From IMG/VR virus record IMGVR_UViG_3300041411_000080, positions 248,001-312,000 of that record: 64,000 nucleotides of DNA. One strand, given 5' to 3'. Below, one piece after another: positions 6,205 through 61,879 of the stretch. Made by a program: the position numbers and the translations under genes. Under the pieces are notes generated by a model, which did no database searches, was not told where the DNA came from, and worked only from the letters and a program-made list of their open reading frames with translations. Numbering within the stretch: position 1 is the first letter of the stretch; each line of letters starts with the position of its first letter.

Positions 6205-6612
6205 TTAAACAAAAGTAACCGAGGTAGGATTCTCACCTTGGGCTTTGACTGCGGCCAAGATACGGTCCTTACGAGTTTCATCAAAGTCGTCGAACACCAT
6301 AGTCAGACGTTTACCGTTATGCACCGATAGGGTCCCAGTACGAATCCATGGAATACCAAGGATCTGAGTTTCCCCAGAACTGAAACGGATCTGGAAATAG
6401 TTGTACTGGGTTGGATCTACCGGCGTACCCGATGGGAGTGACTGGTAAACGTTTTGGTTAGCGCCTACTACGTCGAAGCCGAGCATCCGGGCAATGCCAG
6501 CATCGAACACGGCTGTAAGGGTTACGGCTTTAAAGTTGTTACCGTACTGTGCAGATGGGTATACCTCAAAGGAGATTACTGTGCCGATTGGGATCTCTTG
6601 AATAGTTGCCAT
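6205..6612 (-). CDS. conserved phiKZ-family protein (gp49-like by position)
   Basis: 135 aa, next to DNA polymerase, ILGIPWIR motif; homolog number from recalled synteny. Confidence 0.6.
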   Translation of the reverse strand: MATIQEIPIGTVISFEVYPSAQYGNNFKAVTLTAVFDAGIARMLGFDVVGANQNVYQSLPSGTPVDPTQYNYFQIRFSSGETQILGIPWIRTGTLSVHNGKRLTMVFDDFDETRKDRILAAVKAQGENPTSVTFV

Positions 6613-6627
6613 GGTGATACCGATTGT

Positions 6628-7083
6628 TTATGGATTCATATCTTTGGGGATAACTACGAATCCAAACGTTCCTTCGAAGTCCAAAGGCATCATGGTAACG
6701 ACTGTTACATTAGGGTGAGTCTTATAGAACTCAGTAAGGATTTCTTTAACCGATACGGCATCAGCATCCTCAAAGAACTCGTCTGGGTAATGAGCATCAC
6801 GAAAGTACTGACGGTAAGTATCACGAATCTCGTACTGAAATGAATCGAAGAATGAGACAGCAACTGTTGTTAACTCAATTGCCAACTCAGCCTTCGTCTT
6901 ACATTTAGCCATTCGACTATAGATACTGAAGTCACCCCTTGGTTCTGAATGAAACTTAAGGCGTAACTCGTAATCCTCGAGTACTCGTCCAGTGGCGTCA
7001 TTAAGATCTATCTTCCAGCGTTCAGCTAGGATAGGTCCCGCCCAAGGGACCATGGTGATAAAGCTATACTTTGGGATGTCCAT
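6628..7083 (-). CDS. hypothetical protein, tandem paralog of 7064-7489
   Basis: C-terminal PNVTVVTMMPLDFEGTFGFVV. Confidence 0.8.
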   Translation of the reverse strand: MDIPKYSFITMVPWAGPILAERWKIDLNDATGRVLEDYELRLKFHSEPRGDFSIYSRMAKCKTKAELAIELTTVAVSFFDSFQYEIRDTYRQYFRDAHYPDEFFEDADAVSVKEILTEFYKTHPNVTVVTMMPLDFEGTFGFVVIPKDMNP

Positions 7084-7489
7084 TTGTAACCGCCTTAACT
7101 ACGAAACCGAAGGTGCCTTTGAGATCCAATGGAATCAAACTCTGTACCGTAAAGTTAGGTTCGTTCTTCTGGAACTCAGTTACGATCTTAATAACGTCGT
7201 GCATGTCGGGTGTCTCATTACCTTCGATCAACTGCTCAACCAGATCATCATCGTAGAATGTCATGGCGTAGTGATCGAACGTATCAATAACCTTGCGCTG
7301 GAACTTTCTCAGATCTAGGCCGTTAGCTAAAACATGGTCGATAATCCTTAGGACAGCTGGATCTTCTGGACAATCCTCATTGGCATGCATCTCTTTTTTA
7401 TGTTGCTCGAACTCATCGATGAATCGCTGAGCTATGAGGGGACCATTAGTAGGTTCCCCTACAATGAATAGGTTTGTGACTGCCATCAT
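7064..7489 (-). CDS. hypothetical protein, tandem paralog of 6628-7083
   Basis: C-terminal PNFTVQSLIPLDLKGTFGFVV. Confidence 0.8.
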   Translation of the reverse strand: MMAVTNLFIVGEPTNGPLIAQRFIDEFEQHKKEMHANEDCPEDPAVLRIIDHVLANGLDLRKFQRKVIDTFDHYAMTFYDDDLVEQLIEGNETPDMHDVIKIVTEFQKNEPNFTVQSLIPLDLKGTFGFVVKAVTNGHPKV

Positions 7490-8301
7490 ATTAGTCCGTG
7501 CTCCGGGAATATAGCTGGTAGCATTACTACGGGGGCTTCAGCGAGAGTAGTTACTGTATCCTTGATACCATTGAAGGTTACGCGGGGCGCCATGTTACGA
7601 TAACGACTCTCGAACGTGGGGTTAGCGATCTCTTCTACCATAGCTTTATTAAGGGCTTGAGAATATACACCCCATGCTTGGTTAGTTTCTTGTTCTCGCA
7701 GTTCTTTCTTCCTCATCTCCCAACGAGCTAGGACTTCAGGTGAATCATTAATGATCATACCCTTAAGGTCATCTTCCTTAGGATCGTACGACTCAGCATT
7801 CTCTGGGCTTTCACCGAATACCAAGTAGTACGACTCATTGGTGTTGAGGGTATAAGATTCAACCTTCTCGATAGACTGACCTGCACGAGACAGGTCCTCT
7901 ATTACTGGAGAGAGCATCCCAGCCAAGTTACCGCACGCCATTGCAAACAGAGCCGATAAGTAACTCAGGGTTTGTGGGTTCTCGTTGATGTGATCCTGTA
8001 TAAGTTTGAATGAGTCATTTAGATAGTAGCTGAACTCAATAGCTTTTGGGTTCTGCATACCAGCATTGAATTGTAGGTAGTGTTCCAGTGCATCTTTGAG
8101 CAGTCCTTTAATAGACAACTCATCGTACGCCGTTAGAGTTCCTGTCTCATCGAAGAACTCAAGGTGTTGCGGATGACCGACTGGATAACGTGCTGTAGCA
8201 ACTTTGTATGCAGCATTACGAATCACGTCAGCCATCTGTGTTAACGTGTGTTCGATTTCATGATGGTTGATCATCATTCCGATTGTGCGTGATTGATTCA
8301 T
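7486..8301 (-). CDS. hypothetical protein with C-terminal tail-sheath-like peptide
   Basis: 271 aa; NMAPRVTFNGIKD resembles the sheath N-terminus. Confidence 0.85.
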   Translation of the reverse strand: MNQSRTIGMMINHHEIEHTLTQMADVIRNAAYKVATARYPVGHPQHLEFFDETGTLTAYDELSIKGLLKDALEHYLQFNAGMQNPKAIEFSYYLNDSFKLIQDHINENPQTLSYLSALFAMACGNLAGMLSPVIEDLSRAGQSIEKVESYTLNTNESYYLVFGESPENAESYDPKEDDLKGMIINDSPEVLARWEMRKKELREQETNQAWGVYSQALNKAMVEEIANPTFESRYRNMAPRVTFNGIKDTVTTLAEAPVVMLPAIFPEHGLI

Positions 8302-27028: not shown

Positions 27029-27086
27029 TACTCAGCGGGACATGATGTGTAGCAATATCGCTACACTACTACTAGAAGGCAATAAG

Positions 27087-27647
27087 ATGTACTCTATCAA
27101 AATCATGTCCCGTGAGAATATGCCAGACGCTGATGTCGGCAAAGGTTTTAAAATGATCCTTGTTGACGCAGGGGATACATTTGAGTTCGGTCATAATGAC
27201 CAAGGTGAACCGATTGTTACCGTCAGTGTTAACAAGGGTGAAGAGAGTAGCTGTATTGAATATCCAGTTACAGGCAATGCCTACGTAATGAGTGAGACAG
27301 GTAAGACTGTAGCATCATTCTGGGCGCGTAACAAACAGACCGTTCGAGTTACCATTGATCCACGTGATCCTGAACCAGAACGAACCGTAAGTGCTATTCA
27401 AGCCGTCGTACGTGAATATAGCGCTGACGGTAAATCGGCATCGCTTGGTCCAGTCGGTCGGGATTCGTATCAAGTTGCAGTCGATCGATTTACTGTTGCC
27501 GATGAGGCGATCACTGACACTACCGATGTAACGACATACAACGCCGAACAACGGTGTATGATCTACCGTACTCGTGTAGGTGTACGTATGAGAAACGGTG
27601 CAACGCAGGCAGAAGCCATGGCTGCTGAGGCACGTTGGATTCAATAA
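27087..27647 (+). CDS. hypothetical protein
   Basis: start MYSIK; AYVMSETGKTV motif; C-terminal IDPRDPEPERT segment. Confidence 0.75.
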   Translation: MYSIKIMSRENMPDADVGKGFKMILVDAGDTFEFGHNDQGEPIVTVSVNKGEESSCIEYPVTGNAYVMSETGKTVASFWARNKQTVRVTIDPRDPEPERTVSAIQAVVREYSADGKSASLGPVGRDSYQVAVDRFTVADEAITDTTDVTTYNAEQRCMIYRTRVGVRMRNGATQAEAMAAEARWIQ

Positions 27648-27694: not shown

Positions 27695-27928
27695 TTAAGC
27701 GTAAGCGCTGTTGGCTTCGACTGGTCGAGACCGAACACCGTCTGGCTCGTAACTATCACTGGTGACTGCACTGGCAGACTGGTTGAGTTGATAGAACAAC
27801 CCAACGTCTTCACCTGCGGCTTGGAAGCCTAGCATATTTTTGTATGCGTCAGCTTGATCCGTAACCGCCGATGGAGACTTACCTGTGTATTGGGTTTGCA
27901 CCCTTTGCAGCGGATACGTATTAGCCAT
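27695..27928 (-). CDS. small protein co-transcribed with tail tube
   Basis: TAATG coupling to tube stop. Confidence 0.65.
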   Translation of the reverse strand: MANTYPLQRVQTQYTGKSPSAVTDQADAYKNMLGFQAAGEDVGLFYQLNQSASAVTSDSYEPDGVRSRPVEANSAYA

Positions 27929-28803
27929 TAGTCAACCCCGTTGTAAGTCACACGGTTAGTAGCAGAACGCTCAAGTTGTTGCTTGAGGCCGATGTTCGCA
28001 GCATTAACGTTGGCACTGATGCCTTCGGTCCAAGTGCGTTGATCGTTAGGGTTCATACCACGGATGTTCATACGCTGGAACAGTTCACGAGCATACATGA
28101 TCACGCCTTCCGATACGTCAGTCATAGCAGCGAACTCAATAGAGAGGTCGAGGTTCTGACCAATCTGGGAAGCATCCTTACGGGACTCCCATGGACCGGT
28201 AGACATTGGGAACATGTTAGTGCAGAGATATGCACTAGTTACGTCTTGGAAGGTTGGGTCCGGTTCGATGAACAGTACAGTAGCACCGTAGAAGGTGGCA
28301 TCGTACTTCTCTACTGGAACGTTACCTTCAGCAACGATACGTGGAACTTTGGTGTTCTCGTCAGCGATACCGTAGGTGATCCACCAGCGAAGGAAACGCT
28401 GAATGGCACGACCTTGCAGTTCCCAGCAACCCAGCGAAGGGTTAGAACGTGCACGGGTAACGTTGGTAGCTACCTGAATAGCTTCACCCGAACCACCCCA
28501 AGGGGCGTCCGCGGTATCAACCTGAATGGTTTGTTGCAGACCATCAATAGTCCGAACGTGGTTTTCAATCAGGGCTTTGAGAGAACGAACCAGTTGCTTT
28601 GGATCTTTCGCATATTGGAAGAACCGAGGTGCCTCCAACAGGAAAGGAATAACGTTCCGACTTACGTACGGAGTGTTACTCGCAAGGTTAGCCAGGTCTG
28701 GACGGAATACGTCTGTACCTGCCTGACTCAAGTTAATGGTGTTCTTCGCCCCACCCGCGCCGTAACCAGTGACGGGCGCCATTGGATCATTATAGCGTTT
28801 CAT
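27928..28803 (-). CDS. tail tube protein (phiKZ gp30-like)
   Basis: 291 aa directly after sheath; LFIEPDP...AYLCTNMFP motif. Confidence 0.8.
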
Positions 28804-28843: not shown

Positions 28844-30952
28844 TTATACAGTGGCAACAGTACCTTCAGTAGCAGCTTCACGACGAACAGTTTCCAGCTT
28901 GAAGTTCATGACCGTACGTGGGTTGTTAGCCGCTACGGTTACGGTGCAAGTCCAGCTGAAGCCGTTGTTGTCATCGGTTGGGGTGATCTCAGTACGAGGA
29001 GTGATATCTACACGACCGCCGAAGAGGTCACGGGTGATATCCAGAATCTCCTGGTCGCAGCGCTCTACAAGTTGTTCTTTAGTCAGGGAAGCGTTACCCG
29101 AGAACTTGGCGTGGATTCTGTGGATCAGGCGCATGATTACGCAGCAGATGTTCACAGTAACCGGCGAGAGCAATACCGAAGTATCGTCAAGCATAACCGA
29201 GCGGTGGCAAGCGTAGTACTGACGACGCTTATTGTAGGTAGTCGATGTGGTTGCACCGTTAACCCACAGGTTCGAAGCAACACGAGCATTGAAGAACGGA
29301 ACGTTCAACGACTTAACGAAGTTAACCTCGTTATTCGGAGATTGGTCCATTTCCATACCCGGACGCAGGATACCGTTACCAGCACCAGCATACTTAGCCC
29401 AAGCCATTGCAACGTCAAGCACTTGTGGAACACGCTTGTTATAGTTGCTACCCATCAACTTACCAGATTGCAGAACAATAGATGCCCGGCAAACAGGGGT
29501 ACCGTAAAGGGTCGACTCAGGGAAAGCTTTCAGACGAGTCATGATCGCGATGCAACGAGAAACTTCGTCACTGGTGGACAGGCCACGGGTGTCGGTTTCA
29601 ACGAAGCTGGTGAACATGCAGTACAGGTCACGACGTGCGCCCAGAACTTGCATCATCTTGTACTTGGATGCCAGAGGCAAACCGGTATCGTAGATGAAGC
29701 CGAACTGATAACGCGCGATGTCTTCGTACTGATCTTCCAGTTGACCGAAGTTGGTGTTCTCCAGGTCAGTCAGGGCGACATAGTTCTCGAAGCTAGTAGT
29801 ACCATCGGAACCGCCGGTTGCAAACACAGTAGCGTTCTTACCAAGCAGTACACCGCCATCCAGAGCGCCCAGCAGTTGGACGGTCATGTACGGATCACCA
29901 TCCAGATTCAGCATGGTCAGGAAGTCGATTTGACCCGGACCTTTAACCTGATCACCGAAAGCTGGGTTAGCCAGCAATTCCGAATCCCAGACAAGCTGTT
30001 GAACCATGGAGATGTTTTCGCGATAAACGAAAACTTGGCTGAAAGGCGAGAACATAGGAGTCAAGCCGTTTTCGATACCGTCATCTTCGTACTGAGCAAT
30101 CAACACTTCGTCGATGGTCAGGTCACGGTCAGTAGACTCAGAGTAAACGCCTTCATCGAAGGATACGTTAACGTAGTCTTCACCCAGTGCAGTCTTGATG
30201 ATCTGCGGGGTGTTCAAACCGTTCATCAGTTCTACGAACTGAACGCGATACATACGGGTATCGAACTGGTCGGTAGCTTGTTCATCGTAGCCTTCGATAT
30301 CCAGAGCAGTAGGTGCCCAGATACGCATACCAAGGTTATTACCCAGAGCACCGAAGAAACTGGTTGGCAGTTCCATCAGAGGATACATAGTCGACTGAGT
30401 GCCATCGATACTCGAAACCATGGTACCAGGCAGAACGCGCTGCATACCGATCTCGGTGTCGTTGTCTTCAATCAAAACGATACGAGCTTTCAGACCTTCT
30501 ACAGTGACGTCAGCCAGTGTGCTTACGCCACCGCTACCAGCCAGAGTAGTTGTTTCAGGATACAGGAAACCGCTCAGGCGAGTTACAGCCTTAGGTACCA
30601 TATCACGAACGATGTCGATTGCCAGAATCAAACGTGCCGAGTTACCAGCATCTTCTGGACGCAGACGTTTTACATAGAAACCATTACCCTGACCCAAGAG
30701 GTTCAGAGCAAGAAGCGATTGTTGGTTAAAGTACTTGCTACGTGGATCGAGCGACATCTGACCATAGATGCCAGCAAAGCCATCATCGGTATCGCCAACG
30801 TAAGTGGTGGCGGTCGGACCAGTCTCAGTGAAGAGACGCAGCAAGGGGGTGTGTTGAGCGTAGGTTTCATCTGGACGAATCAACGCCCGACGACTACGAT
30901 CGCGAATCCCGTTAAATACTACACGCGGGACCGCATTAGTGAAAGTTGCCAT
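28844..30952 (-). CDS. contractile tail sheath protein (phiKZ gp29-like)
   Basis: 702 aa; GGSDGT, IYDTG and [13 protein letters not shown] motifs; precedes tube. Confidence 0.88.
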
Positions 30953-32036: not shown

Positions 32037-34679
32037 ATGGATAACTATCTCTTGCGCTACGCAATTGATAATGTCTGGTGTAACCCAACGCAAGATAAGC
32101 AGTTCACGTACGCTCTACAGAAACTTACCCCGCGCTACGGCATCCGGGGTAATTACGTTGTAGAGCAGACTCGGTATTTCATGCCGACGAACAACAACCG
32201 TGACTACTATCATATCTTCCAGATTGGCCAAGTGATCCCAGCGAATATCGGCATGCCGAAGACGAAGGACACTTGGTTTAACCTGACGACACTTGCGAAG
32301 GATCATCTGACATTAGCCCACGTATACCCAGTCAATGGTGTACGTTACAGCATGTCTGAAACATACGTGATGGTTACCTCTCGGCAGAACCTTTTGGTTG
32401 CTGTTAAGATTAACGATCGTTTCCCTGATTTGGAAGACCAACCGATCTTTATGCACCTTTACCATAATGCCTTCTATGACTCAGAACGCAGTGGTGCAGT
32501 TAATCGTCGTTGGCTACATGCTGAATCTATCGTGGCTGCTAACACAGAAGCCATTCGTCAGTTCCAAATCCGCAACGCTGACCGTATTGCCGCTGATGGC
32601 GGAGTCGGTATGTATTTCGTTAACGGTAAACCAGTTAATGAGATTAGTGTTGTAACAGCTGTACCCGGAGATCACTGTGATTTCATCTTGGACCCAACCA
32701 TTAAGAAAGTGGTTGACTTTAAGATCCAAGATCTCCAAACGTTTAACAGTACTCTAGACACCGAACGTAAATACATCCTGCACTATCCGGGACAAACAGA
32801 CGTAATCGATTTCTATGATGACTGCACAGCATTGTTGGTTAAGCGCGGCCCTACCCCTGATCAATTCAAGGGACTTACGTACCACCACAACAAAGGTACT
32901 TGGCTGAGACAACTGACCCACAAGGATTACAGTATCTCGGTAAGTAACATCCAGGAGTTTATTGCAATGACTCCTGAGTGGTCTGGTCTGGATGACATGT
33001 ACGTTAAGTTGTACATTCGGGATGGTGGCTATAACCGACCTCTGGTTGCAGACTCTCATCGGATCTGGGAACTGTATCGACTGACCTCTGCTCAAATCCT
33101 TCAGAACATGACGGGTGTTGATGCCACTAACCCATTGTGGCGTGCAGAGAACCTTGAACGTTCTTATTACGTTCAGTTCATGTCAGCTCAACCTAGCTTT
33201 GTGTATCCAATCACCTACAACGATCCGGCACTTAATAGTGAGGGTAAAGTAGAAGCACAAAACTTTGCAGCAGAAGTCTTCGGTTATCACGAATGTGCTA
33301 AGCTCATGAACGATAACCCTGCTAAGGTCGTCGTAGACCCCAATACGGGCGTTCGTATGGCACAACTGGCGTTCTACTACTGGCGCAATGCAACGTGCTT
33401 TGAATACGACGATAAGGGCGTTCTGTTGGAATACCATTATCACGTAGGTGGTAAGGTGTATGTCCCTAAGAATCCTAATTGCGCAATGGTTGAATGCGTA
33501 ACCGGTAAAGGTTCTGATAACTTGAACGGTTATTACGGTAACAACGAAGTAGCCTTGAAGTATGGCTATAACTTCCGCGTTTACGTAACAAAGGTTTGGG
33601 GTGGGGTTCCATCGAGTGAATGGCAAGACATTACCGATCTACCGAACCGTGGTGATTGGGGTTACTTCGTAGACGATCTGTATGCTCCTAAGTGGGTATG
33701 GACTGTTCCTGAATCTCAGTGGATGGGTTACCTGCGTACCGATGAATATTTCTACCTTAAGGAATTCGTCTTCAATGACGATCCGGGTGTTATTCGGTTA
33801 GCAATCTCTGCATGGGAACAACAAGGTGGTCAACTGGTTAACAAAACCATGGAGATCCCTTTTGGTCAGCTCGATACGTTCTTTAACTATCGACCTATTA
33901 TCCAAGGGCTGGATTATCTCATCGACGGTGAGTTGGTTGGTATCCATAACCTCGAGTACCGTGAAAACGGATTGCAAAAGGTTCTGTTGCGGGGTACTGG
34001 GTTCTGTTCTCCAGACATGAAACGGTACGATCCAGCTGAGTTTGGTTTCGTTGAATACGGGGTGCTGTCTAACGATTCGGACTACCATATCCACTCGCAC
34101 AAAATGCAGCGGATTATCGTAGATGGTCACTACAAAGACTATCGCGATGTGGTATTCGAAGAAGACCGTAATGGACGGGTAGTTGAGGGCGAACGTAATG
34201 GTTCACCTTATCAGATTCAAACACCACAGGTAACTTTGAAGACCGTCTTTAAAGACGATAAGAAAGCCCGCGTGGAAGATGACCTGAGAGATCAACAAAC
34301 TAGTGAAGCTATGGGTTTCTATTTCCCTAAACGGGATCGACCTAACCCGGACGTGTTCACTAACCATTACCATGTCTATTCCGCGTTCTCGAACAAAGTC
34401 GTGCAGGATATGCTGAAGGGGCGACTGAAACCTCCTTTTACAAATGGTCGCTACACTGACATGGATATCGTGAACACAATGAAGTCGTACGAGTGGCTAC
34501 AACCACTTGACATCCTTAATCACGATTACAACACCAACCATGTGAAAGTATATCCACATTGGAACTCTAGTCCCATCGGGCTGACGCAGGATCAATACGA
34601 CTTCTATCGTCGTGTTCTGAAACTGTATCTACGCCAAGATATGGAACTGTCTCCATTCTTCTTCATCACGGGGGCTTAA
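32037..34679 (+). CDS. virion structural / putative baseplate protein (phiKZ gp27-like)
   Basis: 880 aa; NVWCNP.QD.Q and RQLTHKDYS motifs; synteny. Confidence 0.7.
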   Translation: MDNYLLRYAIDNVWCNPTQDKQFTYALQKLTPRYGIRGNYVVEQTRYFMPTNNNRDYYHIFQIGQVIPANIGMPKTKDTWFNLTTLAKDHLTLAHVYPVNGVRYSMSETYVMVTSRQNLLVAVKINDRFPDLEDQPIFMHLYHNAFYDSERSGAVNRRWLHAESIVAANTEAIRQFQIRNADRIAADGGVGMYFVNGKPVNEISVVTAVPGDHCDFILDPTIKKVVDFKIQDLQTFNSTLDTERKYILHYPGQTDVIDFYDDCTALLVKRGPTPDQFKGLTYHHNKGTWLRQLTHKDYSISVSNIQEFIAMTPEWSGLDDMYVKLYIRDGGYNRPLVADSHRIWELYRLTSAQILQNMTGVDATNPLWRAENLERSYYVQFMSAQPSFVYPITYNDPALNSEGKVEAQNFAAEVFGYHECAKLMNDNPAKVVVDPNTGVRMAQLAFYYWRNATCFEYDDKGVLLEYHYHVGGKVYVPKNPNCAMVECVTGKGSDNLNGYYGNNEVALKYGYNFRVYVTKVWGGVPSSEWQDITDLPNRGDWGYFVDDLYAPKWVWTVPESQWMGYLRTDEYFYLKEFVFNDDPGVIRLAISAWEQQGGQLVNKTMEIPFGQLDTFFNYRPIIQGLDYLIDGELVGIHNLEYRENGLQKVLLRGTGFCSPDMKRYDPAEFGFVEYGVLSNDSDYHIHSHKMQRIIVDGHYKDYRDVVFEEDRNGRVVEGERNGSPYQIQTPQVTLKTVFKDDKKARVEDDLRDQQTSEAMGFYFPKRDRPNPDVFTNHYHVYSAFSNKVVQDMLKGRLKPPFTNGRYTDMDIVNTMKSYEWLQPLDILNHDYNTNHVKVYPHWNSSPIGLTQDQYDFYRRVLKLYLRQDMELSPFFFITGA

Positions 34680-54551: not shown

Positions 54552-55787
54552 TTATGGAACGAGTTCCAATACTGGACGCCAACCGTAACCGGAAGTCGGA
54601 GGAGTTGTATCACTAATAGCCCACGAAGTCTGGATACTAGTAAACCCTCGGGTCGTACCACCGTAAACATGCGTGAGAACACCTGGTCGTACAGCACCAT
54701 TTGCAACGCATAGGTCAGTGTTATTATAAGCTGCCCAGAAGTTGGTGTTAACAACAACGGTAGAGTTATCGTAAACCGAGTACATGTAACGGTTCCACTC
54801 GGCATCCGTCATCAGACGGCACTTGTAGTTCTTACCTCCGATAGTAACCAACTTACCATCCGCTGTGTTACTGATACCAGCAGCGTTAAGTACCGAGCGG
54901 TTAATACCATCGCGGAAACTCTTCTGCGCGATGTAGAGTTCTTTACCGTTCTCTACAAACTTCATCCACGCGCCAGCGCCGGATACTACAGTACCGACAG
55001 TCACGCCAGCTAAGGTCGACAGATCAGCTACGTTGATCAGTTCCTCGGGTTGTACCAGTCCTTTATACGGGGTTACTGGAACTGGCGGCGTGGTACCTTT
55101 CTCAACCAACATCGGACGCCAACCGTAGTACATCTCGGTATTGTTGTCACTAGTGTACCAAACACCCATGACGTTAGGAACGTTGTTAGTGATAGGGTAG
55201 CACAAACCACGAACAGCGTGTCCAGTATTGGTGACAATTTCCTTCATGTAGGACATGCCACCCGGTGGGAAAGTATTGATCGCCTGAGTTTCTGAGATAA
55301 GTGGGATACCCAACATCTTCTCAGTATAACTACCCCAGTTCTCACGAGTAGCTGGAAGTTGGTTAGCCCGTTCACCAGCATAAACGTTGTAGATGTAACG
55401 ATCCCAAGCACCGCCACCGTTAGCATTGGATGCAGCTAGGTTATTAGCTTTCATACCAGTCATGAATTCAACGAGGAATGTCTTCCCACCGATAATGATT
55501 TCTTTACCAGTCTGAGCTGTGTTAATAGCTGGCCATGTTAATGCAGCGCGTAGCGGTTTCTTGGCGATGTAGATATTGTATCCGTTGTCTTCAACAAAGT
55601 GTAGCCACCCGGCATCACTGTTAATAGATACACCAGCGGTTAAACCTATTTGGCTTGCTAACTGCGAACCGGTAATGAAGTTCTTAGCGCTCACCACCCC
55701 TTTAAATGGCGTCCCAGCCGGAAAGGGTAAATTACTGTCATCCGAAGCGGGGGCCTGATTTCCAGACACTAAGAGTTGTTCTAGCAT
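54552..55787 (-). CDS. virion/tail-fibre-like protein with two tandem domains each ending GWRP.L
   Basis: repeated W.[HK]F......YIA.K..R, I..GGK, W.RY.Y and YGWRP motifs. Confidence 0.7.
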   Translation of the reverse strand: MLEQLLVSGNQAPASDDSNLPFPAGTPFKGVVSAKNFITGSQLASQIGLTAGVSINSDAGWLHFVEDNGYNIYIAKKPLRAALTWPAINTAQTGKEIIIGGKTFLVEFMTGMKANNLAASNANGGGAWDRYIYNVYAGERANQLPATRENWGSYTEKMLGIPLISETQAINTFPPGGMSYMKEIVTNTGHAVRGLCYPITNNVPNVMGVWYTSDNNTEMYYGWRPMLVEKGTTPPVPVTPYKGLVQPEELINVADLSTLAGVTVGTVVSGAGAWMKFVENGKELYIAQKSFRDGINRSVLNAAGISNTADGKLVTIGGKNYKCRLMTDAEWNRYMYSVYDNSTVVVNTNFWAAYNNTDLCVANGAVRPGVLTHVYGGTTRGFTSIQTSWAISDTTPPTSGYGWRPVLELVP

Positions 55788-55877
55788 GATAGGTTTCCTG
55801 AGGATATTTATATAAGCATAGGATTAAGCCAATACCTACCCGATTATGATATGTTTAAGATTATCTTTGGAGCGAGT

Positions 55878-58220
55878 ATGAATTCGCTAGACCTTTTGAT
55901 CCGTCGAATTAAAGACCGGATAACCGTTTCTAATGAAGATGCGGTTGATATAGTAAAGCAGTACTGGGATGACGCCGTAGATACAGTTAAGGGTTACTGG
56001 CAGGACGTTGACGAGGCGATCGTAGAAGAAACGGGCATTCCCCGAGCTTCTCTATCACAGCTCTTAGACGACAACCGGCAAGCTCATAGCTATGCTAACG
56101 TTGGCGGTAACTCAGGGGTAGCCAGTTACGATCTTGGAGATGATTGGTTTCTAGTGAACTTCACAACTGGTTCTCGATACCTCTACACCACCAAGTCTGC
56201 TACACGCGAACAGATTGAAGAAATGAAACGGTATGCTAATGATGGTAAAGGTCTGAACTCCTACATCATGCGTACTCTTAAAACCAATTATGCTGGACGA
56301 AACGTTAAAGGAGAGATCCTCATTAAACCGGGGATGGAACATTACTCTCGCCATGCATTTAAACGAATCGAACTATTAGAGGCATACCGAAGTACCATGA
56401 ACACACAAGTCGTAAGTACTGAAGGGTTGATTGCCGATATTAAGAAATTCTTCGGAGTATCGAACAAATCCGCTAGAAAACTCTTTATTGACAACACTTT
56501 CGGCTGGAGTGTAATAGAACACATTGAGCGCGATATCCTGAGACCAGAATGGTTGAAAGACCAAACCTACAACAAAGGTGAGGTTAGTGGTAAGAGCGTT
56601 CTGAAGTATATAGGTAAAAACGGTAAGGTTGATATCACTGGTGCAAATAAACAATTGGATGCTTTCCTTGCGGCGCGCATACGAGTTAAGAAAGCTACCG
56701 ATGACTGGCGCCGTAAAACTAAGCCAGTTGCCGATATACTGATGCAAAACGCTAGAAAGCTAACGCCTGAAGTCTATGCCAGTGCCAAAGCAGCCATGGA
56801 TAAAATCCCAGTCGAGAAATATGACGTGAACTATCCAACTACCCCAGTGGTGGGTAATGGTAAACGTCATGAGAATCCTAAGCGGGTAGATTTTGTTTAC
56901 ACACCAGTTGACCAGCCGATACCGGCACTCGATGAGGGTGAGGCTCTTAAATTAGCTGCGGATATCCAACGGTCGATTGACGAGTTTAAGAAAAACATGA
57001 CGGGTGCACCAGATGAATGGCCCGATATCATGCATGCCATGGTTTATACCATGCAACCCAAGAACTACGGTGGTGTTCCTTACGACGATTGGAATTCTCT
57101 TATTTGGGATATCCTTAGCCCAGACACTAACGAGACAACTCACTATAGCGGCATGATCGCAAACCGACTGTACTGGGATGCAATCGTGGGGTTAGTTCGA
57201 TATCTTGATGTATCAATCAAAGGGGACACTATTATTTCTGGTGAAAATTACACACCTTCGAATGTTAAAGAGGCTAATATGCATCGCACGCTGCTAAGAT
57301 ATAAAGACCAAATTAGTAAGGCCGGCCAAGACGGTCTTGATCCGGTGGCCAGACAGTTTATGTCGGTAGGTCTTGAGTCATTGGGTGGTGAACCATTGTC
57401 AACCCATGGTACCAATGCTCCAACCAATAGCTCTGAAGCGTTTAATGACCCAATGGTCCCCTCTATGGAAGACCTGCTTGGATCAATTAAGAAGTTCTTC
57501 ACTAAAGGTAAGGACACCGCTATCTACGATACCGTAGGTAAAGGCTTCCTTCAAGATCTCGTGCACGAAGTGAAGAAGTATACCGATCCTAACTGGGTTA
57601 AGACCCTAGGTGTAGTAGAACCTCAGAAAGTAAGCGTGGATGGTGCTAACCTTATTGCCGATTTTGACAAAGTCGTTCCAGAGTTTATTAAAGCCTGTCA
57701 AGCCAACCGCGTGGAACACCACAAAGTGACCGAGCAAGCATTCAGTAACATGGAAACCGTGATGGACATGGTCAAACGTAAACAGCTTGATAACTCAACT
57801 AACGTTGAGAAAGCCATTACGATCATGAAAGCTACTCGTCAACTGAAAGCTCCTAAGGTAGAAGTACCTAAGGTGACTATGCAGAAAGGTGAAGTCAAGA
57901 CCTTGAACGCTGAACAGATTGTTGATCACGCTAAGAAGGTACATGCCTTGTTCGATGTTCTGGGTGCCGATCTGACATTCGTTAAAAGGTGGAATGATAA
58001 CTTCATTAACACCCATGCTTGGATGGATTGGAAGTACGTAGGTAAGTCCAACTACAGCGAGCTGTATCAACAAGTAAAAGATCCTAAGTTTACTGAACTG
58101 TATCAGAAGGCAATGGAAAATGTTTACGACATGCATCGTGTAGGCGTGGAGTTCCATAAACTACAGCCTTACATCATGGCCGTATTCCAACTGATTGAGA
58201 AATCGGTTAAAGACAAGTGA
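55878..58220 (+). CDS. head (ejection-type) polyprotein with multiple prohead-protease sites and a KTSC-like N-terminal module
   Basis: SNE, STE, SGE, GLE and SME sites (S/A/G-x-E); NSGVASY...VNF..G..YLY...GLNSYI. Confidence 0.7.
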   Translation: MNSLDLLIRRIKDRITVSNEDAVDIVKQYWDDAVDTVKGYWQDVDEAIVEETGIPRASLSQLLDDNRQAHSYANVGGNSGVASYDLGDDWFLVNFTTGSRYLYTTKSATREQIEEMKRYANDGKGLNSYIMRTLKTNYAGRNVKGEILIKPGMEHYSRHAFKRIELLEAYRSTMNTQVVSTEGLIADIKKFFGVSNKSARKLFIDNTFGWSVIEHIERDILRPEWLKDQTYNKGEVSGKSVLKYIGKNGKVDITGANKQLDAFLAARIRVKKATDDWRRKTKPVADILMQNARKLTPEVYASAKAAMDKIPVEKYDVNYPTTPVVGNGKRHENPKRVDFVYTPVDQPIPALDEGEALKLAADIQRSIDEFKKNMTGAPDEWPDIMHAMVYTMQPKNYGGVPYDDWNSLIWDILSPDTNETTHYSGMIANRLYWDAIVGLVRYLDVSIKGDTIISGENYTPSNVKEANMHRTLLRYKDQISKAGQDGLDPVARQFMSVGLESLGGEPLSTHGTNAPTNSSEAFNDPMVPSMEDLLGSIKKFFTKGKDTAIYDTVGKGFLQDLVHEVKKYTDPNWVKTLGVVEPQKVSVDGANLIADFDKVVPEFIKACQANRVEHHKVTEQAFSNMETVMDMVKRKQLDNSTNVEKAITIMKATRQLKAPKVEVPKVTMQKGEVKTLNAEQIVDHAKKVHALFDVLGADLTFVKRWNDNFINTHAWMDWKYVGKSNYSELYQQVKDPKFTELYQKAMENVYDMHRVGVEFHKLQPYIMAVFQLIEKSVKDK

Positions 58221-58227
58221 GGTTAGC

Positions 58228-59217
58228 ATGTCTATCACTACCCTAACGAAATACAAAGACCAAATTAGTAAGGCTGGTCAAGATGGTCTTGATCCAGTGG
58301 CATGTCAGTTCATGCAAGCTGGTTTGGAGTCAATGTGTAATGTGTTGACAACATCATTGGAACATCAGGATGACAGTACCGCTACGCAGCGACTAGAAGC
58401 GATCGTTGACAAACAACTGGTGTCTAATGAAGGCATCTTCGATAACATCAAGAAATTGTTTGGCGGTAAACCAAAGCCTAAGGACGATGGTCCTGTTCCA
58501 GAAGCAGCTATCGAAATTAGTTCTGTCGATAAAGCTGAAGCATTTGTTAAGTCTACAGATACTGAAATCCCAGCCAAGACGGTAAGTAAAGGTTATAGTG
58601 CCTTGTTCCTTAAAGGCGGTAACTATAATCCTAATTGGCTTAAAGACCTAACCAAGGATTTGACTGAGTATGAGAAACTCATCCGCGCAACCGTTAACTA
58701 TGAAAAGGTAATGAAGCGTTGGCACGACAAATATAAATCGCAGCTGGACAACTTCGTTGGTGACACTGAGCGTCAACCAGAATTCCTGGCCGTACTTAAA
58801 CAATACGTGAAAGATCAACCCAAGCCATGGATCGAACTTTATCCATCAAATCACGACTACCTGATCTTCGGTAAACAGTTGGACGATGGTGAGGACTTCG
58901 ATCGGGATGTTCCTGGGTCCGCTGGAACCACCGCCGTAGATATTCCAGAACAATCAGCTACCCAAGTAAGGCAGGTCGTTAACAAAGTTGTGACGGTTTA
59001 CAATGATCTTTACAACGTGATCTACGATATGGGTTACTATGGTGCAGACTTCACCGATGCTCCTTTCCGTGGCTATGCGTTCGATGAGGAAGTGGTCGAG
59101 GAACTTAATAAGCTTCGCATTCACGCACATGCTAACAATAACCCAGTTGATTGCGCCAGTTCGATCGATAGTCGCCTGAGTACTATTCTCTCGTGCTTAG
59201 GTAACTATGTGAGTTAA
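58228..59217 (+). CDS. head protein with propeptide and protease sites
   Basis: GAGG RBS; GLE, SLE, SNE-GIFDNIKKLFG. Confidence 0.75.
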   Translation: MSITTLTKYKDQISKAGQDGLDPVACQFMQAGLESMCNVLTTSLEHQDDSTATQRLEAIVDKQLVSNEGIFDNIKKLFGGKPKPKDDGPVPEAAIEISSVDKAEAFVKSTDTEIPAKTVSKGYSALFLKGGNYNPNWLKDLTKDLTEYEKLIRATVNYEKVMKRWHDKYKSQLDNFVGDTERQPEFLAVLKQYVKDQPKPWIELYPSNHDYLIFGKQLDDGEDFDRDVPGSAGTTAVDIPEQSATQVRQVVNKVVTVYNDLYNVIYDMGYYGADFTDAPFRGYAFDEEVVEELNKLRIHAHANNNPVDCASSIDSRLSTILSCLGNYVS

Positions 59218-60490: not shown

Positions 60491-60522
60491 CAATGTTATA
60501 GACTTTCAAACTGGTGAGTGTT

Positions 60523-61164
60523 ATGATCGAACTATTAATAGTTGAGGAAAAGATAGTAACTGGTCCTATTCCAGGTACTCCCACGCTTTTAGCGGGTAAC
60601 GATCAACTAGGTTGGTATGGTGAAGTGCCAGTAACAGATTTTATAAATGGTCCAGATCTAGCTACACGCGTGGGTCTAACTTTGGGTACTAGTCAAAACC
60701 CAACCGGAGCATGGCTAAAGTTTGCCTATCAAGGTAAAATACTTTTTATTGCTAAGCAAACATATCGCCACTCTATATCGATGGATGCTTTCCTCAATGC
60801 ACAGATTGCAACTGGCAATAGAACTGTAACCATAGGTGGTCGAACCTACCGGATAAGATTGATGACCGGTACTGACGGTGCAGGTGAACTGGTAACCGGT
60901 GGGGAATGGAATGCACTGATGTATCGCGTAGCTGCCGGTACACAAATTCCCGCTGAAGATAAGTGGGCGAACTACACCACATCTGAAATGAGTTATGGTT
61001 CAGGCGGCAATGGCTATATTACCTGGTGTCGTGAAGTTAGAGCCTCAGCAGGCGCTATATACGCCACACGTGGTAACGGCAGTATAACAGCCATCCATGG
61101 CTATACCAAAGCCACCGCATCTTTTCAATATGGTTGGCGACCAGTACTTGAGTTAGTTCCATGA
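60523..61164 (+). CDS. virion/tail-fibre-like protein, GWRPVLE family
   Basis: GWYGEV, WLKFAY, GEWNAL, YGWRPVLELVP. Confidence 0.75.
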   Translation: MIELLIVEEKIVTGPIPGTPTLLAGNDQLGWYGEVPVTDFINGPDLATRVGLTLGTSQNPTGAWLKFAYQGKILFIAKQTYRHSISMDAFLNAQIATGNRTVTIGGRTYRIRLMTGTDGAGELVTGGEWNALMYRVAAGTQIPAEDKWANYTTSEMSYGSGGNGYITWCREVRASAGAIYATRGNGSITAIHGYTKATASFQYGWRPVLELVP

Positions 61165-61171
61165 GGTTACT

Positions 61172-61879
61172 ATGATTGAATTAATGTTAACGGTCCCTAA
61201 GCCAGTGGTCAACCCTTGGCCGGCAGGTATCCCTGGACCGCAGACCATAGCTACAGGTGATCAGAATATCGGTTTCTTTGGTGAAGTGTCGGGTACTGAT
61301 TTTATTACTTACCCTGATCTACAAACCGCAGTTGGCTTTACAACTGGCAACGCGATGAACCCGACTGGTGGATGGCTAAAACTAGCTTATAAAGGGAACG
61401 TCCAGTTCATCTCTAAACTTAGTGTTAGGAACAACGTTTCTTGGGCAGCTATGAATACGCTGGGTATTGTATCAGCCGCTCAGAATAAATTGATTACTAT
61501 TAAAGGTAAGGTTTACCGTCTACGCCTGATAAATGGTGTCAATGTCGACCCGTATCCAGTTAACGCCGATGATGCCACTGGTGGACCATACACAACTGGT
61601 ACTGAATGGAACCATCTTATCTATGGATTGCTATCAACCGCAGTTGGTGCACAGAACCTAGAGGGTCCGGCGTTGGCCACCTACGGTACTACTGATTTGG
61701 GACTGTCTCCATTTGGCAACGGTACGAGTATCCTTGTTAAGGAACTGGGTCCGGGTCCAGTGTCTATGGTTCGTGGTAACGCTAGTGGTGCTGTGCGTGG
61801 ACTTTATCGTTATGCAGCGCTAGCTAACGCGGATACGATCCGTGGATGGAAACCTGTGCTGGAATACGTCAGCGGTTAA
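61172..61879 (+). CDS. virion/tail-fibre-like protein, GWRPVLE family
   Basis: GFFGEV, WLKLAY, TEWNHL, GWKPVLEYV. Confidence 0.75.
   Translation: MIELMLTVPKPVVNPWPAGIPGPQTIATGDQNIGFFGEVSGTDFITYPDLQTAVGFTTGNAMNPTGGWLKLAYKGNVQFISKLSVRNNVSWAAMNTLGIVSAAQNKLITIKGKVYRLRLINGVNVDPYPVNADDATGGPYTTGTEWNHLIYGLLSTAVGAQNLEGPALATYGTTDLGLSPFGNGTSILVKELGPGPVSMVRGNASGAVRGLYRYAALANADTIRGWKPVLEYVSG

What the first reader, a model, noticed from the sequence alone, without database searches (positions are those of the whole stretch)
7558..7596. Copy of the tail-sheath N-terminal arm on the C-terminus of an unrelated early protein
Seen: NMAPRVTFNGIKD (7596-7558) versus sheath [13 protein letters not shown] (30937-30899): 9/13 identical plus K/R, yet most shared residues use different codons (CCC CGC..TTC AAT GGT ATC vs CCG CGT..TTT AAC GGG ATT), so similarity is held at protein level. 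Established: sheath terminal arms complete beta-sheets of neighbouring subunits. Inference: the peptide may cap or chaperone sheath subunits to prevent polysheath, tether tail assembly, or be another decoy epitope. This is a second in-window example of core-protein mimicry.
Basis: seen in the sequence. Interest (0 to 1): 0.75.

Follow-up and report, generated by a model that had tools for sequence, protein, structure and literature searches.

The report
Sheath-arm peptide copied onto import factor Imp2
A jumbo phage carries near-copies of the 13-residue arm that links its tail-sheath subunits on two non-structural proteins, one a phage-nucleus import factor, and selection preserves them, which suggests an unrecognised link between tail assembly and the phage nucleus.

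Summary
The window comes from a 321-kb phiKZ-like (Chimalliviridae) phage. ORF 7486-8301(-) is the ortholog of phiKZ gp47, known as Imp2. Imp2 is the adaptor needed to import the UvsX/RecA-like recombinase into the phage nucleus.

Residues 236-248 sit in a predicted disordered C-terminal tail that phiKZ Imp2 lacks. They match the sheath N-terminal extension at 9 of 13 positions. A bare 9/13 match is near chance, at about 0.4 pairs per shuffled window. The case rests on other evidence:
- All 8 members of the window's Imp2 clade keep the motif N-x-x-P-R-V-x-F-N-G-I-x-D-T. Mean identity is 0.73 in the motif and 0.17-0.26 in the flanks, and the changes are synonymous.
- The other 24 Imp2 homologs lack it.
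- A third family outside the window, the 201phi2-1 gp236-like proteins encoded next to uvsX, carries the same motif in all 13 members.
- Profiles built separately from each family find only the other two in the proteome (E 1e-7 to 7.5e-5; the next hit has E>1).

Most likely the peptide docks by beta-strand addition into the arm-acceptor site of unassembled sheath. Binding is not shown, because the one complex prediction gave no verdict.

The parts
7486..8301 (-). Imp2 ortholog (271 aa; equivalent to phiKZ gp47, 201phi2-1 gp79 and PhiPA3 gp44), the carrier of the motif
   Evidence: BLASTP against phiKZ gp47 gives 27% identity and E=4e-14. tblastn hits 201phi2-1 gp79 and PhiPA3 044. It matches phrog_17816 at 4e-45. 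The gp47-gp48-gp49 synteny is kept. Imp2 function is from bioRxiv 10.1101/2024.03.27.586873.
7807..8301 (-). Conserved Imp2 N-terminal domain (aa 1-165)
   Evidence: AF2 pLDDT is mostly 80-92. This is the only part shared with phiKZ gp47, which is 178 aa. It has no PDB fold match.
7624..7740 (-). Predicted long helix (aa 188-226) at the start of the C-terminal extension that phiKZ Imp2 lacks
   Evidence: AF2 secondary structure; pairwise alignment with phiKZ gp47.
7555..7596 (-). Sheath-arm-like motif NMAPRVTFNGIKDT (aa 236-249) in a predicted disordered tail
   Evidence: pLDDT is below 50 for aa 230-262. P239, R240, F243, N244, G245, I246, D248 and T249 are invariant in 8/8 clade members, while flanks vary with indels.
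7489..7524 (-). Second conserved island at the extreme C-terminus (MLPAIFPEHGLI); function unknown and unrelated to the sheath
   Evidence: P-A-I-F-P-E-x-G-L is invariant in 8/8 members. Its HMM finds nothing else in the proteome.
28844..30952 (-). Tail sheath (702 aa, phiKZ gp29 family)
   Evidence: Pfam phiKZ_gp29PR 1.7e-97 and phrog_3242. It matches the PDB phiKZ sheath 9xpf at E=0, and the motif residues are identical.
30890..30952 (-). Sheath N-terminal extension (aa 1-21), containing the motif [13 protein letters not shown] (aa 6-18, nt 30899-30937)
   Evidence: N-A-x-P-[RK]-[VI]-x-[FY]-x-G-I-x-D is kept in nearly all of 120 phiKZ-type sheaths down to 51% identity, with rare substitutions at single positions. 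The homologous phiKp24 extension M1-S21 binds the C-terminal domain of a subunit in the ring below. The same is described for phiKZ.
27928..28803 (-). Tail tube (291 aa). Its C-terminus NRVTYNGVD looks motif-like but is not a significant match
   Evidence: Pfam Phage_TTP_14 7.6e-97. The motif HMM gives only E=2.1.
7064..7489 (-). gp48-like (Imp4-like) gene directly downstream of Imp2, with a 4-nt overlap
   Evidence: Weak similarity to phiKZ gp48 (E=2e-5 over 29 aa) plus conserved gene order.
6205..6612 (-). phiKZ gp49 ortholog (baseplate ring protein), which anchors the synteny
   Evidence: 52% identity, E=1e-46. The gp49 role is from PMC13250141.

Best explanation
The Imp2 ortholog of this phage clade has acquired a short linear motif in its disordered C-terminal tail. 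The motif reproduces the N-terminal 'handshake' strand of the phage's own tail sheath. A second non-structural family, the 201phi2-1 gp236-like proteins encoded next to uvsX, carries the same motif.

In the sheath, this strand leaves one subunit and completes a beta-sheet on the C-terminal domain of a subunit in the ring below. The copies keep exactly the positions that the sheath family keeps: N, P, R/K, V/I, F, G, I and D. The most economical reading is therefore that they dock by beta-strand addition into the same acceptor site. That site is free only on unassembled sheath protomers, on the growing top ring, and on the homologous site of the baseplate sheath initiator.

The consequence is inferred. 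There are two possibilities:
- The carriers cap or hold sheath protomers, limiting off-pathway polymerisation.
- The abundant late sheath pool titrates Imp2 and the gp236-like protein, coupling recombinase import to the onset of tail production. Sheath should vastly outnumber Imp2, so this direction is stoichiometrically more plausible.

Shown: the motif, its selection, its recurrence and the identity of the carriers. Inferred: binding to sheath and the physiological outcome.
For: - Motif conservation: mean pairwise identity among the 8 clade proteins is 0.73 in the motif, 0.26 upstream and 0.17 downstream. Eight positions are invariant amid indels.
- Purifying selection: between two complete genomes, 6 of the 9 conserved motif codons differ synonymously, with no replacements at those positions.
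- Specificity: three independently built profiles each find only the other two families (E 1.1e-7 to 7.5e-5; next best E>1). Control profiles from other conserved islands of the same proteins find nothing.
- Replication: the DNA pattern hits the same three genes in G000 and G001, sheath plus gp236 in 201phi2-1, and sheath only in phiKZ, PhiPA3, Phabio and Viktualia. Reversed controls gave 0 hits.
- Depth: the gp236-like family keeps the motif in 13/13 members at 25-35% overall identity.
- Sheath motif: kept in nearly all of 120 sheaths.
- Accessibility: the motif lies in a predicted disordered tail, pLDDT below 50.
- Structural precedent: the terminator gp98 C-extension contacts the top sheath ring.
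Against: - No binding evidence exists. The single complex prediction (sheath 21-702 with Imp2 226-271) scored 0.01, which the tool rates as no verdict.
- phiKZ Imp2 is imported into the phage nucleus, whereas sheath assembles in the cytoplasm. Contact would be limited to the time before import, or to a cytoplasmic fraction.
- Both non-sheath carriers are linked to the UvsX pathway. Imp2 is genetically required for UvsX import, and the gp236-like gene always sits next to uvsX. This hints at a partner other than sheath.
- No co-variation between a carrier's motif and its own sheath's motif could be demonstrated.
- E-values for 15-column profiles are approximate.
Confidence: 0.5

Rival explanations
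1. Common third partner. The motif is a docking peptide for some other factor, such as Imp1/PicA or another nuclear-shell or import component, the UvsX pathway, or a host chaperone. The Imp2 tail and the gp236-like protein use it for that purpose. The sheath N-arm either also binds this factor before assembly or merely resembles its ligand.
For: Both non-sheath carriers are tied to the nuclear recombinase. Imp2 is uniquely required for gp152/UvsX import and is itself imported through Imp1. The gp236-like gene lies immediately downstream of uvsX in G000, in 201phi2-1 and in a third contig. Imp2 is nuclear and sheath is cytoplasmic.
Against: This reading needs an unknown partner. It also needs that partner's constraints to coincide, by chance, with those of the sheath handshake at 8 positions. 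UvsX itself carries no related segment, so this is not a BRC-like mimic of a recombinase polymerisation strand. phiKZ and PhiPA3 import UvsX through an Imp2 that has no such tail. Published work reports that phage-nuclear import does not use linear terminal signals.
Confidence: 0.22
2. Inherited patch with a different, local role. A short piece of the sheath or gp236-like gene was copied into the Imp2 tail. It is now kept for a reason unrelated to sheath, for example folding back onto Imp2's own domain or helix, or oligomerisation.
For: The motif appears only in one young Imp2 clade, 8 of 32 homologs. The tail already existed without it in 201phi2-1, Viktualia and Phabio. AF2 places two short strands within the motif.
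Against: The same motif is kept in an unrelated family across 25-35% overall identity, and possibly in a fourth protein of a distant jumbo phage. This argues for a shared trans-acting partner. AF2 gives no confident intramolecular contact, with pLDDT below 50.
Confidence: 0.15
3. Decoy for a host immune sensor that recognises the sheath N-arm.
Against: No defence-related gene or sensor is linked to the motif. Presenting a sensor's ligand earlier in infection would more likely trigger the sensor than blunt it. The carriers are an import factor and a uvsX neighbour.
Confidence: 0.04
4. Chance resemblance with no function.
For: A bare 9/13 match between two proteins of one window is expected about 0.4 times in shuffled proteomes.
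Against: Conservation in 8/8 clade members with synonymous-only change; reciprocal profile hits with a clear gap to noise; a third family; replication in a second genome; zero hits with control patterns.
Confidence: 0.02

Closest known systems
Sheath N-terminal extension ('handshake' or mesh arm) of contractile tails: phiKZ gp29, phiKp24 gp118
   Same: It shows the same 13-residue pattern, with the same conserved and variable positions. The sheath copy in this window is identical to phiKZ gp29 over the motif.
   Different: The copy is not at the N-terminus of a sheath protein. It is internal to the disordered C-tail of a non-structural import factor, and there is no sheath fold around it.
phiKZ gp47 / Imp2 (phage-nucleus import adaptor for UvsX-like gp152)
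   Same: The N-terminal domain is homologous (E=4e-14), and the gp47-gp48-gp49-DNA polymerase gene order is the same.
   Different: phiKZ Imp2 is 178 aa and ends after the conserved domain. The window's protein has a roughly 100-aa extension (helix plus disordered tail) carrying the sheath-arm motif and a second conserved C-terminal island.
Tail terminator and sheath initiator proteins (phiKZ gp98, gp62; T4 gp15, gp25) that complete or accept sheath arms at the tail ends
   Same: They are non-sheath proteins that engage the sheath's inter-subunit interface. The gp98 C-terminal extension reaches the top sheath ring.
   Different: They are virion components and show no sequence match to the arm motif in this genome, where only three genes match. 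Imp2 and 201phi2-1 gp236 are not flagged as virion proteins.
BRC repeats of BRCA2 mimicking the RAD51 oligomerisation strand (own knowledge, used as an analogy)
   Same: The concept is the same: a short peptide in a disordered region copies a polymer's inter-subunit beta-strand and so controls or exploits the unpolymerised protomer.
   Different: It is a different polymer (sheath, not recombinase). The phage's UvsX-like protein has no related segment. Binding is not shown here.
201phi2-1 gp236-like family (uncharacterised)
   Same: It carries the same motif, N-x-x-P-[RKH]-[VI]-x-[FS]-x-G-[IVM]-x-D-G, in all 13 members.
   Different: Its sequence is otherwise unrelated. The motif is internal, and some members end in a CxxC...CxC zinc-ribbon-like segment. 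AF2 gives no confident fold.

Membership tests
Imp2 (phiKZ gp47) family | Sequence homology to phiKZ gp47 and PhiPA3 gp44 | tested here: met
   BLASTP gives E=4e-14 and 27% identity over 162 aa. tblastn hits PhiPA3 044 at 5e-18. phrog_17816 matches at 4e-45.
Imp2 (phiKZ gp47) family | Conserved position upstream of gp48 (Imp4), gp49 and DNA polymerase | tested here: met
   The gp49 ortholog is 52% identical, and a gp48-like gene lies between.
Imp2 (phiKZ gp47) family | Required for import of the UvsX-like recombinase; itself imported through Imp1 | not testable with these tools
   Shown genetically only for phiKZ and PhiPA3.
Contractile-sheath N-terminal extension (handshake arm) | Matches the sequence profile of the arm | tested here: met
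   A profile of 120 sheath arms hits the Imp2 tail at E=7.5e-5, and all 8 clade members at E 1.5e-5 to 0.046. The other 24 homologs score E>8.
Contractile-sheath N-terminal extension (handshake arm) | Is the terminal extension of a sheath-fold protein | tested here: not met
   The carrier has no sheath domain. The motif is at aa 236-249 of 271 in an Imp2 homolog.
Contractile-sheath N-terminal extension (handshake arm) | Adds a beta-strand to the C-terminal domain of a neighbouring sheath subunit | tested here: inconclusive
   Complex prediction gave score 0.01, which the tool rates as 'no answer'. It is not evidence either way.
Short linear motif (SLiM) in a disordered region | Lies in a predicted disordered segment | tested here: met
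   pLDDT is below 50 for aa 230-262.
Short linear motif (SLiM) in a disordered region | Is an island of conservation between fast-evolving, indel-rich flanks | tested here: met
   Mean identity is 0.73 in the motif against 0.26 and 0.17 in the flanks. Six of the nine conserved motif codons differ synonymously between the two genomes.
Short linear motif (SLiM) in a disordered region | Has a defined binding partner | not tested
   No experiment exists; the structure prediction was uninformative.
BRC-like mimic of a recombinase polymerisation strand | The motif resembles a segment of the cognate recombinase | tested here: not met
   All three motif HMMs score the UvsX-like proteins of G000 and 201phi2-1 at E>25.

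The most novel reading that the evidence does not exclude
The sheath handshake arm has been co-opted as a portable docking peptide. Through it, non-structural proteins of the phage-nucleus and recombination pathway (Imp2 and the uvsX-adjacent gp236-like protein) bind unassembled tail sheath. This would create a direct molecular coupling between late virion-protein accumulation and nuclear import or recombination, or a dedicated capping system that keeps sheath from polymerising off-pathway. No such link has been described for any contractile-tail phage.
Probability: 0.3. Interest if true: 0.85.

Novelty: new variant of a known kind. Interest (0 to 1): 0.7.

Why it matters
How nucleus-forming jumbo phages coordinate events inside the phage nucleus with virion assembly in the cytoplasm is an open question. 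What stops the very abundant sheath protein from polymerising without a baseplate and tube is also unknown.

A conserved copy of the sheath's inter-subunit strand sits on an import adaptor and on a recombinase-neighbour protein. This gives a concrete, cheap-to-test handle on both questions: one peptide, a few point mutants and one binding partner to check.

It also shows that Imp2 is modular. A conserved domain is followed by a fast-evolving tail that acquires motifs. This matters for understanding cargo selectivity of the phage nucleus.

If binding is confirmed, the 14-mer would be a natural inhibitor or probe of phiKZ-type sheath assembly.

Tried and rejected
- Complex prediction (sheath 21-702 with Imp2 226-271) scored 0.01, 'no answer', and its controls were not run. 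It is not evidence for or against binding. Short peptides and small interfaces rarely pass this test.
- An AF2 model of the gp236-like protein was poor (mean pLDDT 42) and gave no usable fold.
- A Foldseek search of the Imp2 model against the PDB found nothing at E<=0.001. A PDB sequence search with Imp2 and with the gp236-like protein also found nothing.
- Idea: the gp236-like C-end (NPHTVASI) mimics the sheath C-arm region (NNPRTVMNF), which would make a complete 'cap'. Rejected. Its HMM does not find the sheath. In 201phi2-1 and P0159 the segment belongs to a CxxC...CxC zinc-ribbon-like end.
- Idea: the tail-tube C-terminus NRVTYNGVD is a further copy. It is not significant (E=2.1).
- Idea: the motif mimics a UvsX polymerisation strand, as BRC repeats do. 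Rejected.
- The Imp2 extreme C-terminal island and the gp236-like N-terminal island have no match elsewhere in the proteome. They served as negative controls.
- Relaxed scans of IMG/VR with degenerate motif patterns returned mostly random short frames. Only the gp236-like loci and one 374-aa ORF in a 264-kb phage looked real.
- Literature searches for 201phi2-1 gp236 and for phiKZ gp29 polysheaths found nothing in the held library. My recollection that recombinant phiKZ gp29 self-assembles into polysheaths is unverified here.
- Expression timing ('early') was not tested.

Full report
**What the window is.** The window is positions 248,001-312,000 of a complete 320,858-bp virus record with direct terminal repeats. 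Its sheath, tube and replication genes place it among the phiKZ-like, nucleus-forming jumbo phages. The closest cultured relatives are Pseudomonas phages Viktualia and 201phi2-1, then Phabio, PhiPA3 and phiKZ.

**Observation check.**
- ORF 7486-8301(-) encodes 271 aa. Residues 236-248 are NMAPRVTFNGIKD, at nt 7596-7558.
- ORF 28844-30952(-) is the 702-aa tail sheath (Pfam phiKZ_gp29PR, 1.7e-97). Residues 6-18 are [13 protein letters not shown], at nt 30937-30899.
- Nine of 13 residues are identical, plus a K/R pair. Only 2 of the 9 identical residues share a codon, and nucleotide identity is 22/39.
- Taken alone the match is weak. Ten shuffled versions of the window proteome (94 ORFs, 19,655 aa) gave 0-1 protein pairs with a 9/13 match, mean 0.4.

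**Why it is nevertheless real.**
- A database search found 27 homologs of the 271-aa protein.
- The seven closest (70-77% identical, from different contigs and sources) all carry N-x-x-P-R-[VI/N]-x-F-N-G-I-x-D-T at the same place. P239, R240, F243, N244, G245, I246, D248 and T249 are invariant. The residues on either side vary freely and contain insertions of up to about 20 residues.
- Mean pairwise identity among the eight is 0.73 in the 14-residue motif, 0.26 in the 12 residues upstream and 0.17 in the 12 downstream.
- Between the two complete genomes of the clade, six of the nine conserved motif codons differ synonymously and none differs by replacement.
- The other 24 homologs, including 201phi2-1 gp79, Viktualia, Phabio and phiKZ gp47, have no trace of the motif. 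They score E>8 against E 1.5e-5 to 0.046 for the eight.

**A third carrier.**
- I built a 15-column HMM from the eight Imp2 tails only and searched a 441-gene proteome of the whole phage. Besides the query itself it found the sheath N-arm (E=1.1e-7) and one further protein (E=8.8e-5). The next hit had E=1.2.
- That protein lies outside the window at G000:C1:126661-127287(+). It is 208 aa and has NSAPRIVFDGIKD at aa 140-152.
- Its ortholog is 201phi2-1 gp236, 25% identical, which has [13 protein letters not shown].
- All 13 family members keep N-x-x-P-[RKH]-[VI]-x-[FS]-x-G-[IVM]-x-D-G, although overall identity falls to about 30%.
- Profiles built separately from this family and from 120 sheath N-termini each recover the other two families and nothing else (E 1.2e-6 to 7.5e-5; next hits E>1).
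- Profiles from other conserved islands of the same proteins find no second protein, which serves as a negative control.
- A degenerate DNA pattern for the motif gave these hits, with reversed-pattern controls at zero everywhere:

| Genome | Genes hit |
|---|---|
| This genome (G000) | sheath, Imp2, gp236-like |
| Second complete genome of the clade (G001, 324,912 bp) | the same three genes |
| 201phi2-1 | sheath, gp236 |
| phiKZ, PhiPA3, Phabio, Viktualia | sheath only |

- A wider scan of IMG/VR found a possible fourth carrier. It is a 374-aa ORF in a 264-kb phage whose sheath is only 28% identical. The ORF has KNALPRVNFCGIKDGDH near its N-terminus, and the phage's own sheath begins ...SSLPRTVFRGIKDES.

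**What the carrier is.**
- The 271-aa protein is the ortholog of phiKZ gp47, with E=4e-14 and the same gp47-gp48-gp49-DNA polymerase gene order. It also matches PhiPA3 gp44.
- gp47 is Imp2. Escape mutations in orf47 abolish import of gp152 (Nlp1, a UvsX/RecA homolog) into the phiKZ nucleus. PhiPA3 orf44 behaves the same way. Imp2 is itself imported, in an Imp1-dependent manner (bioRxiv 10.1101/2024.03.27.586873).
- phiKZ Imp2 is 178 aa. The window's protein adds about 100 residues.
- AF2 models a confident N-domain (aa 1-165), a long helix (188-226) and a disordered tail (pLDDT below 50 for 230-262) that holds the motif.
- The gp236-like gene sits immediately downstream of the uvsX ortholog in every genome examined. 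Both non-sheath carriers are therefore connected to the same nuclear recombinase.

**What the sheath segment does.**
- The motif is kept in nearly all of 120 phiKZ-type sheaths down to 51% identity, with rare substitutions at single positions. It is identical in phiKZ gp29, for which full-length structures exist: 9xpf, 9xps and 9xqs.
- The phiKZ atlas describes the same arrangement. It also describes a terminator (gp98) whose C-terminal extension reaches the top sheath ring, and a sheath initiator (gp62) at the bottom (PMC13250141).

**Mechanism.**
- The copies keep exactly the residues that the sheath family keeps, and they vary where the sheath varies. The simplest explanation is that they fit the same acceptor site by beta-strand addition.
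- That site is unoccupied on free protomers, on the growing top ring and, in homologous form, on the initiator.
- I rate sheath binding at about 0.5.
- The direction of regulation is open. Alternatively the abundant late sheath pool could sequester Imp2 and the gp236-like protein, shutting down recombinase import when tail production begins. Expected stoichiometry favours this second direction.
- The main rival, at about 0.22, is a shared third partner in the import or recombination pathway. The UvsX link and the nuclear location of Imp2 suggest this.
- The phage's UvsX-like protein has no related segment, so a BRC-like mimic of the recombinase is excluded.

**Origin.** The Imp2 extension predates the motif, because 201phi2-1, Viktualia and Phabio have the extension without it. 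The gp236-like copy is older than the Imp2 copy. The Imp2 motif is equally close to the sheath copy and to the gp236-like copy (9/13 each), and synonymous sites are saturated. The donor therefore cannot be named, and patch transfer cannot be told apart from convergence.

**Novelty.** Sheath arms and proteins that complete them at the tail ends are known, and so is mimicry of a polymer's inter-subunit strand (BRC-RAD51; own knowledge). My searches found no description of a sheath-arm copy on a non-structural protein, let alone on a phage-nucleus import factor. I class it as a new variant of a known kind.

Noticed in passing
outside the window: G000:C1:126661-127287 (+) = L005:4662-5288: A 208-aa protein (201phi2-1 gp236 family, directly downstream of uvsX) carries the same sheath-arm motif, NSAPRIVFDGIKD. 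The motif is kept in all 13 family members. AF2 gives no confident fold.
   Followed up: yes
L026:4684-5808 (-) in a 263,994-bp IMG/VR contig (G003); its sheath is at L035:1447-3540: This is a possible fourth carrier in a distant jumbo phage. A 374-aa ORF with no Pfam or PHROG match has KNALPRVNFCGIKDGDH at aa 29-45. That phage's own sheath starts ...SSLPRTVFRGIKDES. hhalign against the gp236-like family matches only the motif region (E=1.3e-4).
   Followed up: partly
window 7489-7524 (-): The extreme C-terminus of Imp2, MLPAIFPEHGLI, is a second invariant island (P-A-I-F-P-E-x-G-L). It is also present in a more distant homolog that lacks the sheath motif (P0012). It has no match elsewhere in the proteome, and its function is unknown.
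   Followed up: partly
window 27931-27957 (-): The tail-tube C-terminus NRVTYNGVD resembles the motif core but lacks one residue. It is not significant by HMM (E=2.1).
   Followed up: yes
window 6628-7083 (-) and 7064-7489 (-): These are tandem paralogs that share ...PLD-x-x-GTFGFVV near their C-termini. The second is weakly similar to phiKZ gp48 (Imp4). This points to a duplicated Imp4-like gene next to Imp2.
   Followed up: partly
window 32037-34679 (+) and 27042-27647 (+): An 880-aa ORF and a 201-aa ORF share a 9/13 peptide (YPVNGVRYSMSET against YPVTGNAYVMSET). By itself it is at chance level.
   Followed up: no
window 55851-58220 (+) and 58195-59217 (+): Two adjacent ORFs share a run of at least 17 identical residues (YKDQISKAGQDGLDPVA). 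This is probably a duplicated module of neighbouring tail-fibre-like genes.
   Followed up: no
window 54552-55787 (-), 60514-61164 (+), 61172-61879 (+): These ORFs share conserved segments, for example ...YGWRPVLELVP at the C-terminus. They look like a small paralog family.
   Followed up: no
L006:3001-3882 (201phi2-1 gp236) and P0159: Some gp236-like proteins end in a CxxC...CxC zinc-ribbon-like segment. The window phage's version has replaced it with ...NPHTVASI.
   Followed up: no
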